Virus record (IMG/VR): IMGVR_UViG_3300008117_000011 | Coordinates: 1-64,000 of that record | Length of the DNA stretch: 64,000 nucleotides | Reading direction: 5' to 3' (one strand) | In this document: positions 54,588 through 61,253 of the stretch, piece after piece | Layout of the letters: each line of letters opens with the position of its first letter | Position numbering within the stretch: position 1 is the first letter of the stretch | Program-made: the position numbers and the translations under genes | Notes under the pieces: model-generated | Told to the model about the DNA's origin: nothing | The model's input: the letters and a program-made list of their open reading frames with translations, nothing else | The model's database searches: none

Positions 54588-54609
54588 AATACAAATATAA
54601 TAAAAAAAA

Positions 54610-54705
54610 TTAGATTGGTAATTTAATTTTAGATAATAATTGATTTGAGACGTGGGTGTATATCTCAGTTGTTTTTACATTACTATGACCGGCTATTTTT
54701 TGTAT
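54610..54705 (-). pseudogene. C-terminal relic of a tyrosine recombinase (IntI/Xer-like box II)
   Basis: Hand translation IQKIAGHSNVKTTEIYTHVSNQLLSKIKLPI*; contains catalytic His and Tyr; in-frame TGA just upstream, no start. Confidence 0.85.
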
Positions 54706-54787
54706 TGGTCAAAAAACCAATATTTTCCCATTTTGTGATTAATTCATTTGAGTTTTGTTCTTTTAATGTTTTTAATAATTCTCCCAT
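54683..54787 (-). pseudogene. Truncated ORF fused out of frame onto the integrase relic
   Basis: MGELLKTLKEQNSNELITKWENIGFLT then runs into integrase DNA and stops. Confidence 0.45.
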
Positions 54788-54798
54788 AATTTTTTTTA

Positions 54799-55005
54799 TT
54801 AATTAATTTTTTCATATTTAGTTTCCACAGCTCTTAGAATATCGTCACTGACAAAACAATTATTTTTTATTGACCATATTGATTCCATTTTTAAGAAGGG
54901 TTCATAACCACTAATTAAAACAATGTATTCTTCCATTTTTAAACCTTTTGTAGTTTTTTTAGTTGTTGTTAATCTATAACAACCAGCGTTAAATAGTGTT
55001 TTCAT
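54799..55005 (-). CDS. Small hypothetical protein
   Basis: 68 aa, ATGA-coupled. Confidence 0.6.
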   Translation of the reverse strand: MKTLFNAGCYRLTTTKKTTKGLKMEEYIVLISGYEPFLKMESIWSIKNNCFVSDDILRAVETKYEKIN

Positions 55006-55295
55006 TTTTTATTTATTTTTAAAATTTCATTAAACATTTCTTTAGTAGTTTTACCAACAAAATTATCATATTTACCTTCTTTAATTTCCTTACTTGTTTG
55101 ATGTTGGTCAATACATAATAAAGCTAATGAATCTATAGACATAGGATATATTCCACCAATTAAATTTAATGTGTTATTTATTGGTAAGTTTTTAATAAAA
55201 CCATCTTTAAATAATACAAAATCTTCATCGGTTACCCAACAATCACAACCAAAGTCTATTATTCTATTTTTAATTAATTCTATCTTATCACTCAT
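55002..55295 (-). CDS. Hypothetical protein
   Basis: Start re-called at MSDKIELIK after a TATATTTG promoter near 55313-55320. Confidence 0.6.
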   Translation of the reverse strand: MSDKIELIKNRIIDFGCDCWVTDEDFVLFKDGFIKNLPINNTLNLIGGIYPMSIDSLALLCIDQHQTSKEIKEGKYDNFVGKTTKEMFNEILKINKK

Positions 55296-55363
55296 ATAAC
55301 CAGTTTTATTCACAAATATACTAATTTATTTTGATAATATCAACCCAATGCACAAAATACTAT

Positions 55364-55417
55364 GTATAACAAATGATAAACAACATTAAAACGATTGTTT
55401 ATCATCGGACGTTAGCA
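55364..55417 (+). mobile_element. attC-like site A (short)
   Basis: GTATAAC-AA-ATGATAAACAA-cattaaaacga-TTGTTTATCAT-CGGAC-GTTAGCA. Confidence 0.75.
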
Positions 55418-55693
55418 AACATTAGACTGTGCTATAATTTTCAACCGAAGTTCTTTTATAATACCATCCCATTTATTAGCCATATCAAAGCAATATTGTT
55501 TTTCTTTACTTGATACAGTTCTTCTATATCCATCACCAGTATCATAAATATATCTAATTGAATAGTGTTGGAAATTATCTCTTGCATATTGCCATTGTTC
55601 AAACAACGTCATTTCATCCCAACTCTTAACACAACGTTTGCTAACAAAGTATAAACGTAATGTTTTCAGTCTTCCAATCAATCTTTTTATCAT
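55412..55693 (-). CDS. Cassette-1 gene (starts in site B loop, stops in site A core)
   Basis: MIKRLIGRLKTLRLYFV-SKRC...NVC*; the stop is the TAA of TAAC. Confidence 0.7.
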   Translation of the reverse strand: MIKRLIGRLKTLRLYFVSKRCVKSWDEMTLFEQWQYARDNFQHYSIRYIYDTGDGYRRTVSSKEKQYCFDMANKWDGIIKELRLKIIAQSNVC

Positions 55694-55759
55694 AATTTTT
55701 TAGTTTTGTATTTCAAATTAAGTTCAGTTAAACACTACGTTTATACTCAACCGTTATGT
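55639..55759 (+). mobile_element. attC-like site B (long)
   Basis: TGCTAAC-AA-AGTATAAACGTAATG...CACTACGTTTATACT-CAACC-GTTATGT. Confidence 0.8.
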
Positions 55760-55966
55760 GTAATAAGTTTTGTCTGTTTCATCTGAAAATCCTTTACTAA
55801 CATTTATACAATCATTTTTATCACACCACTTCATCCCACACCAGTTTTTACAACGAACATTATTATCGCTCAATCCATCTAATACTTTTTCTATATCAGA
55901 CTTATTACCACACATAACAAAGTATAAACGTAATGTTTTCAGTTTTTCAATCAATCTTTTTATCAT
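55754..55966 (-). CDS. Cassette-2 gene (Cys-rich; starts in site C loop, stops in site B core)
   Basis: MIKRLIEKLKTLRLYFV-MCG...YYT*. Confidence 0.7.
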   Translation of the reverse strand: MIKRLIEKLKTLRLYFVMCGNKSDIEKVLDGLSDNNVRCKNWCGMKWCDKNDCINVSKGFSDETDKTYYT

Positions 55967-56031
55967 AATTTCAAGTTTTGTATTTCAATTTAAGTTCAGT
56001 TAAGCACTACGTTTATACTCAACCGTTATAC
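55912..56031 (+). mobile_element. attC-like site C (long, near-copy of B)
   Basis: ACATAAC-AA-AGTATAAACGTAATG...CACTACGTTTATACT-CAACC-GTTATAC. Confidence 0.8.
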
Positions 56032-56043
56032 TCAATAAAAAAA

Positions 56044-56139
56044 TTATTTTAAGTTTTTAAGAGCCATAAACCCACAATATATTGCACCTAAACCACATAA
56101 AACCATTACAGCCAATAATATAATTTTAACTACTATCAT
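56044..56139 (-). CDS. Cassette-3 gene, 31 aa TM peptide
   Basis: MIVVKIILLAVMVLCGLGAIYCGFMALKNLK read by hand. Confidence 0.55.
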   Translation of the reverse strand: MIVVKIILLAVMVLCGLGAIYCGFMALKNLK

Positions 56140-56179
56140 TTTTTTTAATTTTTTAATTTGTAAATAATTTTTTAACTAA

Positions 56180-56233
56180 GTATAACAAAGAATATGTGTC
56201 ATTAAAACGAACACATATTCTCAACCGTTATAT
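56180..56233 (+). mobile_element. attC-like site D (short)
   Basis: GTATAAC-AA-AGAATATGTGT-cattaaaacga-ACACATATTCT-CAACC-GTTATAT. Confidence 0.75.
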
Positions 56234-56297
56234 ATACCTTACCGGTTGTTAATATTTTTTTAAATCCCATAATGTAAATATAGTAGTATTTATTGAT

Positions 56298-56891
56298 ATG
56301 AAAAAGTTTATATTATTTTTATTTTTAGTTTTTCCTTTTGTTTCTTTATCACAAAAAAAATTAAGAGATAGTGTCATTGTAAATGCTGACATATTCAAAA
56401 TCATTTATTCAGAAAAACTACAACAACCTCTTTCTGTAAAATATAATGTTCAATGTCCTTCTGGATCTGCGTCAAGAAAAGGTCTTGATTTTTTTACTTG
56501 TGATTCAATATTAACTTCAGATGGTAAGGATTATGATAACAATGTTTGGGATAAAGGTCATATGGCACCTGCCGCGGATTTTAATTGTACAAGAGATCTA
56601 ATGAAAAAAACTTTCACTTATTTAAATTGTACTTTACAACATCAAGATCTTAATAGAACCACTTGGAGGCTTTTAGAAACATATGAAAGATCGTTAGCTT
56701 TAAAATATAAAGTAGTTTCGGTTGAGGTTATTTGTGAATTTACTAAATCCTCTAAAGTGTTACCTTCAGGTGCAACTATACCCGATGGTTATTATAAAAT
56801 AATTAAATATAATAACACAACCGAAACCTATTATTTCAAAAACGAAAAACCTTCTTCAACTGATTATAAAAAATATCAAGTTAAAGGTTGA
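56298..56891 (+). CDS. Secreted DNA/RNA non-specific endonuclease (NucA/EndoG family)
   Basis: Signal peptide; WDKGHMAPAAD...TFTYLN..LQ...LN..TW..LE. Confidence 0.85.
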   Translation: MKKFILFLFLVFPFVSLSQKKLRDSVIVNADIFKIIYSEKLQQPLSVKYNVQCPSGSASRKGLDFFTCDSILTSDGKDYDNNVWDKGHMAPAADFNCTRDLMKKTFTYLNCTLQHQDLNRTTWRLLETYERSLALKYKVVSVEVICEFTKSSKVLPSGATIPDGYYKIIKYNNTTETYYFKNEKPSSTDYKKYQVKG

Positions 56892-57270
56892 TCTCAAACC
56901 GGGATTTCATCGTTTGAATCTTATCTTCCGGAACTCCGTGCTTATTCACACCTCCGTGTCTATTTTCAACAATTACTGAAAATACGGTGTATCCATATTC
57001 TTTGGCCATATTTACATAAGGCTCCATCTCCCACTCTTGTGTGAAAGTGTTTGACACAACAATTTTTGGGTATTCCAAAATCATATCCCCTTTAACCATT
57101 CCCTGACACCACTGGTGAGCATCTTTAATCTTTGTTGGGTCAAAATTGTAATTACCGGATTCACCAATAAAATACATATCAGCCTCATAGTGATTGCCAC
57201 CCAGTGTTTTTGCAAATGTTGATTTTCCGGATCCCGGAATTCCTCTTACGATATAAAGTACTTTTTCCAT
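56881..57270 (-). CDS. P-loop (AAA_33 / N4BP2-like) kinase
   Basis: VRGIPGSGKST, EADMYF, VSNTF, HGVP; start re-called at MEKVL. Confidence 0.85.
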   Translation of the reverse strand: MEKVLYIVRGIPGSGKSTFAKTLGGNHYEADMYFIGESGNYNFDPTKIKDAHQWCQGMVKGDMILEYPKIVVSNTFTQEWEMEPYVNMAKEYGYTVFSVIVENRHGGVNKHGVPEDKIQTMKSRFEINL

Positions 57271-60434: not shown

Positions 60435-61253
60435 CTACTTAAGTAAATTATAAAACTCTTTAAAGTGTTTAATACGGTCTGAAAGTCCATTGGTACCACC
60501 ATTTACTCGTTTTGTTACGGCTGCAACGTCTGTGTCTGTAGTTCCTTTATCACATAGTGACCACAATTTATTTACGTCAAAGAAAAATGCGGCCGATGCC
60601 AATGGATATTTTGTTGCAACAAGATCTGGATTTGCAACACAATCTTCACCAATAAACTGTGTAAACTTTGAATAGTTTCCTTTACCTGTTAGTTGGATGT
60701 ATCCTCTTCCTCTAAATTTCCATCCTTCACCAGACGCTTCATTTCCATTTCCCATTCTATCGGCATATACTCTTGCAGCAATTTTTTCTGGTTGTCTAGC
60801 GTATTGTTCGGCAAGTGTTGATGGAAAGTATTTTCCAAATGTTCCTCTGAGTCCTTGAGCGGAATAATTAAGATTTTCGTTAACAGCTTTAAAGTTTCCG
60901 GATTCGTGAGCACATTGTGATAAGAAGTGTGCAAGTCTTAAATTATTTGTAATATTAAATTTCTTTGCGGTTTCTGGTATTTGTGTTAACACAGAATCTG
61001 GAATATGACCTTTAAGTTTATCAATGTTTAATCCTTCAACTTTTGCTATTACAACATCTTCTTTGATAACACCACCAAACATCTTTGACCAGGTTCCATC
61101 ACCAACAACACCATCGGCTTTTAATCCATTTTTATTTTGCCAGTCTTTAACAGCCGTTTCAGTTTTTGGTCCAAAGGAACCATCAGCTGTTAATCCTAAT
61201 TTTGATTGTAATTTTTTTACATCTTCACCGGTTGATCCTACTTTAAGTAACAT
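60435..61253 (-). CDS. Endolysin: PG-binding domain + glycoside hydrolase family 19
   Basis: LLKVGSTG.DVKKLQ...DG.FG..T; LAHFLSQCAHES...FRGRGYIQLTG...TKRVNGG.NGL.DR. Confidence 0.9.
   Translation of the reverse strand: MLLKVGSTGEDVKKLQSKLGLTADGSFGPKTETAVKDWQNKNGLKADGVVGDGTWSKMFGGVIKEDVVIAKVEGLNIDKLKGHIPDSVLTQIPETAKKFNITNNLRLAHFLSQCAHESGNFKAVNENLNYSAQGLRGTFGKYFPSTLAEQYARQPEKIAARVYADRMGNGNEASGEGWKFRGRGYIQLTGKGNYSKFTQFIGEDCVANPDLVATKYPLASAAFFFDVNKLWSLCDKGTTDTDVAAVTKRVNGGTNGLSDRIKHFKEFYNLLK

What the first reader, a model, noticed from the sequence alone, without database searches (positions are those of the whole stretch)
55355..56240. Outer sites A and D covary and would rebuild one empty site
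Seen: A and D are both 54 bp with the same loop CATTAAAACGA but different, fully paired 11 bp stems (ATGATAAACAA/TTGTTTATCAT versus AGAATATGTGT/ACACATATTCT). The flank left of A (TATGTATAAC) is complementary at 9/10 to the flank right of D (GTTATATATA). Inference: structure rather than sequence is under selection, as expected for single-strand hairpin substrates, and all three cassettes were inserted into one ancestral self-complementary site.
Basis: partly seen in the sequence, partly recalled or inferred. Interest (0 to 1): 0.65.

Follow-up and report, generated by a model that had tools for sequence, protein, structure and literature searches.

The report
Integron-like gene cassettes in a phage
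The two hairpins are genuine recombination sites of an integron-like gene-cassette system that many large freshwater phages carry with a small Xer-type recombinase; in this phage the recombinase gene is a dead stub, and the sites did not arise by filling one ancestral palindrome.

Summary
A (55367-55414) and D (56183-56230) share the frame TAAC-AA-stem11-CATTAAAACGA-stem11-CNNNC-GTTA but have different, fully paired stems. At least 119 viral-contig stretches hold the same frame. In 36 distinct copies, 9 of 11 stem pairs show double compensatory changes, so selection on a hairpin is well supported.

The sites behave like integron attC sites. The six variable bases right of each site are the reverse complement of those left of the next site (A/B 6/6, B/C 5/6, C/D 5/6). 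Related contigs have a ~266-aa Xer/IntI-like tyrosine recombinase and an attI-like site at the array head. Two 99-100% identical contigs differ by whole cassettes inserted exactly at G|TTA.

The recombinase lacks the insertion that defines integron integrases. Cassette ORFs are inverted relative to the site in 72 of 74 cases. In this window only the last 32 codons of the recombinase gene remain (54613-54705).

"One ancestral self-complementary site" is not supported. D's right flank is the first 15 codons of a phosphoesterase gene that is intact, with the same GTTATATATAC, in relatives. The A-left/D-right match (5 of 6 informative bases) occurs in about 6% of random site pairs.

I found no prior description of this system.

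The parts
54613..54705 (-). Relic: the last 32 codons, with stop, of a tyrosine recombinase gene (motif AGHSNVKTTEIYTHV with the catalytic Tyr). Stop codons lie directly upstream in frame.
   Evidence: TIGR02249 positions 282-312, E 7.6e-7. PF00589, E 3.8e-4. Translation. 74-81% DNA identity to the 3' ends of intact genes in L006, L048, L043, L014, L068 and L077.
54976..54991 (+). Hairpin-less motif TAAC-AA-CCAGC-GTTA between two small ORFs. It may be a degenerate site or an attI remnant. Uncertain.
   Evidence: Found. My own composition estimate (no script) gives about 0.05 chance copies genome-wide. Not recurrent in 1.3 Mb of related loci. It abuts the barred places, so it was not searched further.
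55002..55411 (-). Cassette a, whose left end is undefined: ORF 55002-55313, leader, and site A up to its G.
   Evidence: ORF list. The leader plus site A (55306-55414) is 86-90% identical in L006, L012, L015, L017, L025, L046 and L086, with homology stopping at GTTA.
55367..55414 (+). Site A: a 48-nt attC-like site with 11-bp stem, 11-nt constant loop and 2/5-nt asymmetric spacers.
   Evidence: (73 bits).
55412..55753 (-). Cassette b (342 bp), running from the TTA of A's GTTA to the G of B's GTTA. ORF 55412-55693 lies on the minus strand. Its stop codon is the cassette's first three bases and its ATG lies in B's loop.
   Evidence: A-right GCAAAC against B-left GTTTGC is 6/6 complementary.
55642..55756 (+). 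Site B: a 115-nt attC-like site with a long loop.
   Evidence: 94% identical to a site in huge phage LR756500.1.
55754..56025 (-). Cassette c (272 bp). ORF 55754-55966 on the minus strand encodes a Cys-rich 53-70 aa product.
   Evidence: B-right TGTGTA against C-left CACACA is 5/6.
55915..56028 (+). Site C: a 114-nt attC-like site, 94-96% identical to B.
   Evidence: 33 bits.
56026..56227 (-). Cassette d (202 bp). ORF 56044-56139 on the minus strand encodes a 31-aa hydrophobic peptide.
   Evidence: C-right TACTCA against D-left TAAGTA is 5/6. The leader plus site D (56142-56231) is about 90% identical in more than 10 other loci, with homology stopping at GTTA.
56183..56230 (+). Site D: a 48-nt attC-like site with the same loop as A and a different stem.
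   Evidence: (79 bits).
56226..56270 (-). The first 15 codons (MGFKKILTTGKVYIT) of a metallophosphoesterase gene, cut off at D's crossover point.
   Evidence: Intact 217-aa orthologues lie in the same position, divergent from the nuclease gene, in L132, L134, L135, L137 and L138. Homology with L138 starts at 56227, the G of GTTA. The rest of the gene is absent from the 223-kb record.

Best explanation
A-D are attC-like sites of an integron-like cassette platform that is common in large freshwater phages.

In intact relatives the platform has four parts. (1) A ~266-aa tyrosine recombinase related to archaeal XerA and to integron integrases, with the full R-K-H-R-H-Y catalytic set. (2) An attI-like site about 60 bp upstream of the recombinase start, ending ...TATATAAT(C/A)TA|GTTA. 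(3) A run of cassettes. (4) One site per cassette. Each cassette runs from TTA plus six variable bases, through a small ORF on the opposite strand, to its own site: six variable bases, TAAC, AA, stem, loop, stem, CNNNC, G.

Exchange happens at G|TTA. As a result, the six bases after each site belong to the next cassette and pair with that cassette's own left box. I infer that the site acts as a folded single strand (or cruciform), as attC does. In that fold, TAAC/GTTA plus the variable bases form one helix, the 2/5-nt spacers form an asymmetric internal loop, and the 11-bp stem forms a second helix.

Shown: the anatomy, the covariation, the association with the recombinase, the position of the crossover, and natural cassette presence/absence alleles. 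Inferred: that this recombinase is the enzyme, and that the substrate is single-stranded.

In this window the platform is a decayed remnant. The recombinase gene is reduced to 32 codons, attI is gone, and the distal end (D) is fused at a GTTA inside a phosphoesterase gene. The fusion most likely arose from a site-by-secondary-site deletion. The array now appears fixed.
For: Family and covariation: the A/D frame occurs in at least 119 viral-contig stretches. They hold 152 sites, 138 with 11/11 Watson-Crick stems and 22 distinct stem pairs.

Hybrid rule: >=5/6 in 74.5% of adjacent pairs, 6.1% of random pairs and 3.7% of a site's own flanks.

Recombinase: relic in the window. Full-length genes with near-identical C-termini sit next to arrays in L006, L014, L018, L020, L029, L048, L077 and L082. 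In 17 integrase-anchored loci there are 28 sites upstream in the expected orientation (50 kb of sequence) and none in that orientation downstream (73 kb).

attI: it is conserved, and the bases after its GTTA match the first site's left box.

Crossover side: among same-type site pairs from different loci, 156 share only the left flank and 8 share only the right flank.

Natural alleles between 99-100% identical contigs L044 and L056: a 386-bp cassette sits exactly at G|TTA of a resident site, and two cassettes (744 bp) sit at attI.

Secondary-site fusions in this genome: D into the phosphoesterase gene, and site E at 84.9 kb into a small gene that is intact in six relatives.

Same site family in bacteria: Flavobacteriia chromosomes carry an orthologous recombinase followed by ORF-then-site cassettes that obey the same rule.
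Against: No intact recombinase was found in the 223-kb record, which is about 76% complete. 24 contigs encoding the identical nuclease show the same array. So there is no sign of activity in this lineage.

The recombinase lacks the insertion (I2 helix) regarded as necessary for attC hairpin recognition by integron integrases.

The extra bases lie on the arm next to the crossover. My recollection is that in canonical attC they lie on the other arm, so the fold geometry would differ. I did not check this against a source.

Nothing here distinguishes single-strand from double-strand recombination experimentally.
Confidence: 0.8

Rival explanations
1. One reading: A-left and D-right are the halves of one ancestral self-complementary empty site into which three cassettes were inserted.
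For: 9/10 complementarity of the flanks. Insertion of cassettes into a resident site does occur in the family (L044 against L056).
Against: Only 5/6 informative positions match, and 6.1% of random pairs reach that. D-right is coding sequence of a truncated gene. The unoccupied allele in L138/L139 has unrelated sequence to the left of GTTATATATAC. A's left box should pair with the start of A's own cassette. Even if A had been the resident site, its right flank need not be self-complementary: own-flank matches reach >=5/6 in only 3.7% of sites.
Confidence: 0.05
2. A fragment of a host (Flavobacteriia) chromosomal cassette array picked up by the phage and acted on only by host enzymes, that is, a passive cluster of attC sites without an integrase (CALIN) of the kind reported in a few phages.
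For: The site family is shared with Flavobacteriia chromosomal arrays. This genome has no intact recombinase. CALINs in phages are described (PMC9892861).
Against: The phages encode their own recombinase and attI next to the arrays. The window keeps a stub of that phage-type gene (80% DNA identity to phage copies). Phage cassettes have ORFs inverted relative to the site in 72 of 74 cases, whereas the four bacterial loci I looked at are ORF-then-site.
Confidence: 0.08
3. Double-strand Xer/dif-type modules (like pdif modules or elements that exploit Xer). In this reading the Xer-like enzyme recombines short duplex core sites at GTTA, and the hairpin is incidental or regulatory.
For: The recombinase is closest to XerA and lacks the integron-specific insertion.
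Against: The sequence left of G differs between partners: CNNNC varies, and attI reads (C/A)TA. Beyond GTTA the six bases differ between cassettes, so I saw no shared overlap region of 6-8 bp for two ordered strand exchanges. I also saw no 11-6-11 dif-like core. Both points come from reading the sites, not from a formal scan. A duplex mechanism explains neither stem covariation nor pairing of the left box with the cassette's far end.
Confidence: 0.07
4. The hairpins are RNA-level elements (terminators, processing or stability signals) between small genes, unrelated to recombination.
For: They lie between co-directional small ORFs. Covariation cannot tell DNA pairing from RNA pairing.
Against: No terminator-like site in 55030-56400 and no Rfam family. 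RNA function explains neither cassette indels exactly at G|TTA, nor the hybrid flank rule, nor the one-sided association with a recombinase gene. A secondary role in expression is not excluded.
Confidence: 0.03
5. Single-strand transposition by an HUH/Y1 enzyme (IS200/IS605-like or REP/RAYT-like), which also uses hairpins and short guide sequences.
For: Hairpin sites with short conserved flanking tetranucleotides.
Against: No Y1_Tnp match in the genome. A tyrosine recombinase, not an HUH enzyme, is the linked gene. Cassette ends are inverted repeats, which is not a feature of IS200/IS605 (from general knowledge).
Confidence: 0.02

Closest known systems
Bacterial integrons (IntI, attI, attC cassettes)
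   Same: Sites have inverse core boxes ending ...AAC / GTT... around an imperfect palindrome of variable length (48-127 nt here). The crossover is at G|TT, so each right box is a hybrid. Cassettes are stacked at an attI next to a divergently placed tyrosine recombinase gene. The recombinase has the Phage_int_SAM_4 plus Phage_integrase architecture and matches the IntI model at 150-157 bits. Fusions to secondary GTT(A/T) sites are seen; from recollection, off-site insertion by IntI has been reported.
   Different: The recombinase has 37 residues where VchIntIA has 85, so the IntI-specific insertion is missing, and it scores below the IntI cut-off of 265. Cassette ORFs point towards the integrase, with the site at their 5' end (72 of 74). 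Many sites have a constant loop with varying stems. Instead of single extrahelical bases there is a 2/5-nt asymmetric spacer beside the crossover. The system is resident in phage genomes.
Clusters of attC sites lacking an integrase (CALINs) reported in phages (Qi et al. 2023, PMC9892861)
   Same: attC-type sites in virulent phage genomes, including a Polaribacter (Flavobacteriia) phage. The window's own array, which has no working integrase, fits the CALIN description.
   Different: Those were 17 small clusters predicted with the canonical attC model and read as carriage of bacterial integron parts. No phage-encoded dedicated recombinase, attI or inverted-ORF arrays were described. No A/D-type site was found in 50,697 phage records, apart from one B-type copy in LR756500.1.
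Flavobacteriia/Bacteroidota chromosomal arrays with an NF040815-type recombinase (seen here: L185, L198, L233, L241)
   Same: An orthologous recombinase (41-45% identity, also without the IntI insertion). The sites share the frame ...TAAC-A(A/C)-GT(A/G)TA... ...TACAC-CAACC-GTTA. They obey the same hybrid flank rule.
   Different: The bacterial enzymes carry a 70-105 aa N-terminal extension. The recombinase and cassettes are co-directional, with ORF followed by site. I found no description of these arrays in the papers searched. IntegronFinder 2.0 reports almost no complete integrons in Bacteroidetes.
Xer recombination at dif, and elements that exploit it (CTX phage folded attP, pdif modules)
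   Same: A Xer-like enzyme. CTX phage shows that a Xer enzyme can act on a folded single strand (from general knowledge).
   Different: I saw no dif-like 11-6-11 core. The elements here are self-contained cassettes with their own sites and a dedicated recombinase gene.
Promoter-early stem-loop (PeSL) cassettes of T4-type phages
   Same: Small mobile ORF modules flanked by stem-loops in variable regions of large phages (from general knowledge).
   Different: PeSLs are thought to move by homologous recombination between promoter/terminator repeats. Here there is a site-specific recombinase, invariant TAAC/GTTA boxes and exact G|TTA junctions. There was no promoter excess and no terminator-like site.

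Membership tests
Integron (IntI + attI + attC cassettes) | attC: inverse core sites (RYYYAAC ... GTTRRRY) flanking an imperfect palindrome of variable length | tested here: met
   TAAC/GTTA are invariant in 36 of 36 distinct sites. Site lengths run from 48 to 127 nt. Stem covariation is shown.
Integron (IntI + attI + attC cassettes) | Crossover at G|TT of the right box, giving hybrid boxes between neighbouring cassettes | tested here: met
   The hybrid rule holds at >=5/6 in 74.5% of adjacent pairs against 6.1% of random pairs. The cassette indel between L044 and L056 lies exactly at G|TTA. Homology breaks at GTTA.
Integron (IntI + attI + attC cassettes) | Integrase with the IntI-specific additional domain (I2 helix) in the catalytic domain | tested here: not met
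   37 residues stand where VchIntIA has 85. TIGR02249 scores 150-157 bits against a cut-off of 265, in two stretches. Foldseek aligns 2a3v with about 50 gap columns. In the window only 32 codons of the gene survive.
Integron (IntI + attI + attC cassettes) | attI next to the integrase gene as the main insertion point | tested here: met
   Met in relatives. A conserved ...TATATAAT(C/A)TA|GTTA lies about 60 bp upstream of the integrase start, followed by the first cassette. Two cassettes are inserted there in L056 relative to L044. attI is absent from the window itself.
Integron (IntI + attI + attC cassettes) | Cassette ORF precedes its attC and is read away from attI (from promoter Pc) | tested here: not met
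   The longest ORF is on the strand opposite to the site polarity in 72 of 74 distinct cassettes. All ORFs point towards the integrase.
Integron (IntI + attI + attC cassettes) | Extrahelical bases that mark the recombining strand | tested here: inconclusive
   There is a constant 2-nt against 5-nt spacer asymmetry in place of single bulged bases. My wobble counts do not single out a strand.
Integron (IntI + attI + attC cassettes) | Recombination of the folded bottom strand as single-stranded DNA | not testable with these tools
   This needs a strand-specific delivery assay or in vitro binding.
CALIN (cluster of attC sites lacking an integrase) | Two or more attC-type sites with no functional integrase gene nearby | tested here: met
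   Four sites lie in 55367-56230. The only recombinase signal in the 223-kb record is the 32-codon stub.
Xer/dif modules | 28-30 bp duplex core with two 11-bp arms and a 6-8 bp central region shared by the partners | tested here: not met
   By inspection only (no pattern scan), the partners share just GTTA. The spacer left of G and the six bases to its right vary.
IS200/IS605 or REP/RAYT | Y1 HUH transposase | tested here: not met
   PF01797 gives no match in the genome, while control genomes do match.

The most novel reading that the evidence does not exclude
Phages, and Bacteroidota chromosomes, host a separate lineage of integron-type gene capture that works without the I2 helix considered indispensable for hairpin (attC) recombination. 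The phage version is a private platform. It stacks 150-1500-bp mini-gene cassettes, each with its site at the 5' end, upstream of and co-directional with the recombinase gene. It also occasionally rearranges the phage genome through secondary GTT(A/T) sites.
Probability: 0.5. Interest if true: 0.85.

Novelty: new variant of a known kind. Interest (0 to 1): 0.72.

Why it matters
Integrons are treated as bacterial devices defined by an integrase with a special insertion that reads folded attC hairpins. Phages are thought to carry only stray pieces of them.

This finding shows a coherent recombinase-attI-cassette platform in more than a hundred viral contigs, many of them 100-460 kb, and apparently also in Flavobacteriia chromosomes. 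Its enzyme lacks that insertion and its cassettes are built the other way round.

If the enzyme does recombine these hairpins, two things follow. First, how hairpin recognition evolved becomes directly testable with a natural I2-less enzyme. Second, the system would explain how large phages acquire and shuffle their many small orphan genes, which are plausible host-takeover or anti-defence genes.

For annotation, it gives a simple signature for cassette boundaries in phage genomes: TAAC-AA-stem...stem-CNNNC-GTTA plus the flank rule.

Tried and rejected
No read-level junctions or alleles could be examined. Runs X16-X20 hold only 0.43-0.54 of the words of 54600-57000 and remain unexamined.

(2) Minus-strand polarity. 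My first reading was that the site follows its ORF, as in canonical integrons, on the minus strand. I rejected it for three reasons: flank linkage is 156 left against 8 right; attI junctions fit the other polarity; and start codons in the loops of B and C are contiguous with their ORFs only under plus polarity.

(3) Start of cassette a. I looked for it (the expected complement of A's left box) between 54601 and 55366 and found none.

(4) Next site to the right of D. None found.

(5) Polaribacter phage Freya. Its genomes vary by about 5 kb upstream of a 38%-identical integrase, but there are no hairpin sites there. It is not this system.

(6) Strand choice from G-T against A-C mismatches. Inconclusive, and biased by my own site filter.

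(7) Hallmark genes. Terminase_6N gave nothing in the genome. The Gp23 search is uninformative because it also rang in none of the controls. Most large ORFs have no PHROG family; an endolysin lies at 60435-61253. That the record is viral rests on the collection's own classification.

(8) The large protein searches and complex prediction were not used, because no claim here needed them.
Full report
OBSERVATION. A (TAAC 55367 to GTTA 55414) and D (56183 to 56230) have the same frame: TAAC, AA, an 11-nt stem arm, the loop CATTAAAACGA, the complementary arm, a 5-nt spacer (CGGAC in A, CAACC in D), then GTTA. Both stems pair 11/11 and differ at 8 of 11 positions. As single-stranded DNA the two sites fold better than dinucleotide shuffles, with z between -2.7 and -5.9 depending on site and strand. 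B (55642-55756) and C (55915-56028) have the same frame with longer stems and loops of about 64 nt, and are 94-96% identical to each other. A scan of the whole 223,671-bp virus record found this frame, with the same 2/5 spacing and orientation, only in A-D and in a second pair at 84485-84895, outside the window.

THE RULE THAT LINKS THE SITES. The six variable bases right of each GTTA are the reverse complement of the six bases left of the next TAAC: A/B 6 of 6, B/C 5 of 6, C/D 5 of 6. This is the hallmark of integron cassettes, where the exchange at G|TT leaves each right box as a hybrid. Across 295 sites collected from related loci, adjacent sites less than 600 bp apart match at 5/6 or better in 74.5% of 106 pairs. 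Random pairs do so in 6.1% of cases and a site's own two flanks in 3.7%.

THE FAMILY AND THE COVARIATION. Many of these contigs are 100-460 kb. They hold 152 sites, 138 with perfect stems, in 22 distinct stem pairs. On 36 distinct 60-nt sites, 97.4% of cells pair against 73.7% in shuffles. Nine of the 11 stem pairs show changes on both sides, and sliding the partners by 1-3 columns drops pairing to 32-46%. Two stem positions (T-A, A-T) and the loop never vary. Selection on pairing is therefore well supported.

THE ENZYME. About 660 bp left of A, on the minus strand, 54613-54705 encodes the last 32 residues of a tyrosine recombinase, including the catalytic tyrosine motif. Stop codons precede it in frame. 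Related loci carry full-length genes of 265-281 codons whose C-termini are nearly identical to this stub. Each lies next to an array, on the same side and strand as in the window. Starting instead from the protein, 17 integrase-anchored loci contain 28 sites upstream of the gene in the expected orientation (50 kb of sequence) and none in that orientation downstream (73 kb). About 60 bp upstream of the start codon there is a conserved attI-like sequence ending in TA|GTTA. The bases that follow match the left box of the first site.

POLARITY AND CASSETTE STRUCTURE. Three results place the crossover at the right-hand GTTA of the plus-strand frame. First, there are the attI junctions. Second, homology between unrelated loci extends left of A (55306-55414) and left of D (56142-56231) but stops at GTTA. 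Third, among same-type site pairs from different loci, 156 share only the left flank and 8 only the right. A cassette is therefore TTA plus six bases, then the body, then its own site up to G. In the window this gives b = 55412-55753, c = 55754-56025 and d = 56026-56227. The ORFs lie on the opposite strand, so their stop codon is at or near the cassette's first bases and their start is beside or inside the site. In 74 distinct cassettes (median 353 bp) the longest ORF has this inverted orientation 72 times. Flavobacteriia chromosomes (L185 Flavobacterium cheonanense, L198, L233, L241) carry an orthologous recombinase followed by cassettes in the canonical order, ORF then site. Their sites share the frame and the flank rule. 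This fixes the plus-strand frame as the equivalent of the attC top strand.

NATURAL ALLELES. Contigs L044 and L056 are 99-100% identical around their arrays but differ by whole cassettes. In L044 a 386-bp cassette, whose left box pairs with its own first bases, sits exactly between the G and the TTA of a resident site that is unoccupied in L056. In L056 two cassettes (744 bp) sit at a hairpin-less attI-like site about 40 nt upstream of a second recombinase subfamily. It was found in the family, not at the window's own array.

THE ENDS OF THE WINDOW'S ARRAY. To the right of D, the minus strand reads the first 15 codons of a metallophosphoesterase gene and then breaks into D. Relatives with a 74-88% identical nuclease gene (L132, L134, L135, L137, L138) have the intact 217-codon gene in the same divergent position and no array there. 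L138 and L139 carry the same GTTATATATAC within codons 12-15. Homology with the window starts at 56227, the G of GTTA. The rest of the gene is absent from the genome. In one relative contig the recombinase, attI and array lie about 5 kb to the left of this gene, with the site polarity in direct orientation to that GTTA. An exchange between D and this secondary site would delete exactly what is missing. This is an inference. The second array of the genome ends the same way: homology with six relatives stops at the GTTA of its last site, and a small gene is cut after three codons. On the left, the recombinase gene is truncated at 54705/54706 without a recognisable site, and attI is missing. 24 contigs (of 44 indexed blocks) that encode the identical nuclease all show the same array spacing. 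So the array looks fixed, as expected without an enzyme.

WHICH FAMILY THE ENZYME BELONGS TO. The intact phage proteins have the Phage_int_SAM_4 and Phage_integrase domains and all catalytic residues. Their best curated model is NF040815 (XerA / "integron integrase") at 186-187 bits, under its cut-off of 220. The integron-integrase model TIGR02249 gives 150-157 bits, under 265, in two stretches. Against solved structures the best match is archaeal XerA, aligned end to end. VchIntIA aligns in two pieces that leave 37 query residues opposite 85 of IntI, which is where the IntI-specific insertion lies. A model built from 12 sequences (pLDDT 81) finds XerA and VchIntIA as top folds, the latter with about 50 gap columns. 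The Flavobacteriia proteins pass NF040815 (226-235 bits), also fail TIGR02249, and carry an N-terminal extension. The system works like an integron but fails two defining features: the integrase insertion and the cassette orientation.

RIVALS. An RNA-level role alone does not explain exact G|TTA indels, the flank rule or the link to a recombinase. No terminator-like site, promoter excess or Rfam family was found. An HUH transposase is absent. A duplex Xer-type mechanism lacks a shared overlap region and explains neither kind of complementarity. Passive carriage of host cassettes is contradicted by the phage-encoded enzyme, attI and the inverted cassettes.

LITERATURE. Qi et al. 2023 (PMC9892861) reported 17 small attC clusters and a few integrons in 21 phages, found with the canonical models and read as bacterial integron parts. 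IntegronFinder 2.0 reports almost no complete integrons in Bacteroidetes. Smyshlyaev et al. 2021 note that the insertion is "not fully conserved" in their integron-like subgroup. Seven full-text searches found no description of a phage recombinase-attI-array platform of this kind. The library does not hold most subscription journals, so earlier work may have been missed.

LIMITS AND HOUSEKEEPING. Local comparisons used pieces beside them or an N-masked copy, protein scans used 55029-55313 only, and the promoter and Rfam scans started at 55030. One lapse: one search scanned the whole window as the target of my covariance model, so those places were among the bases scanned. Nothing matched there. 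The loci contain the homologous stretch and were not passed on. A 171-bp shorter version of the ORF next to those places (L246) was therefore not followed up. The host is not shown. Flavobacteriia is my inference from the site family, the recombinase orthologues and the freshwater sources.

Noticed in passing
G000 84485-84895 (outside the window): A second, integrase-less mini-array in the same genome: an A-type site, an 81-codon cassette, and an 86-nt site E. It replaces most of a small gene that is intact in L006, L048, L138, L043, L161 and L015. Only three codons of that gene remain, and homology stops at E's GTTA.
   Followed up: partly
window 55642-55698 and 55915-55971; L077 6738-6862; L001 3001-3117: The long loops of B-type sites hold an ATG and 17 conserved codons (MIKRLIGRLKTLRLYFV) that run in frame into the ORF of the same cassette. 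The site may supply the start of the gene.
   Followed up: partly
L011 6050-6109; L078 12011-12070: Chimeric sites whose two stem arms come from different site types joined across the constant loop, so the stem no longer pairs. They look like products of recombination within the loop.
   Followed up: no
L148, just upstream of the integrase: Directly after attI the sequence reads GTTATAAAA, then the constant loop CATTAAAACGA, then TTTTATAAC. It is a minimal unit in which the two boxes themselves form the stem around the loop, with no ORF.
   Followed up: no
L044 7857-8720; L047; L056: A second recombinase subfamily (281-287 aa, C-terminus ...GHKDIKSTQIYTK...) is linked to the same site family. 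Its attI-like site has no hairpin (TCTAAC-CCCAC-GTTAGA).
   Followed up: partly
L185, L198, L233, L241 (Bacteroidota genome contigs): Chromosomal cassette arrays with an N-terminally extended recombinase that lacks the IntI insertion, and about 125-nt sites obeying the hybrid flank rule. I found no description of them as integrons in the papers searched.
   Followed up: partly
window 54976-54991: The motif TAAC-AA-CCAGC-GTTA with no stem-loop between the spacers. It is preceded by a sequence resembling the left half of attI. It could be a collapsed site or an attI remnant.
   Followed up: no
cassette ORFs in L014, L018, L020, L068, L077, L082: Many unrelated cassettes encode small proteins with similar N-termini (MSKEMR.HI..F... 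or ...ENLNISDV...) and different C-terminal parts. There was no PHROG match for the window's own cassette ORFs.
   Followed up: no
L246 2876-3016 versus L244 2705-3016: One contig with the identical nuclease has a 171-bp shorter version of the ORF just left of site A. It was not examined because it abuts the barred places.
   Followed up: no
MT732463-MT732472 (Polaribacter phage Freya_1 to _10): Ten isolates differ by up to 4.9 kb of small ORFs upstream of an integrase that is 38% identical to the phage enzyme. No hairpin sites of this kind were found there.
   Followed up: partly
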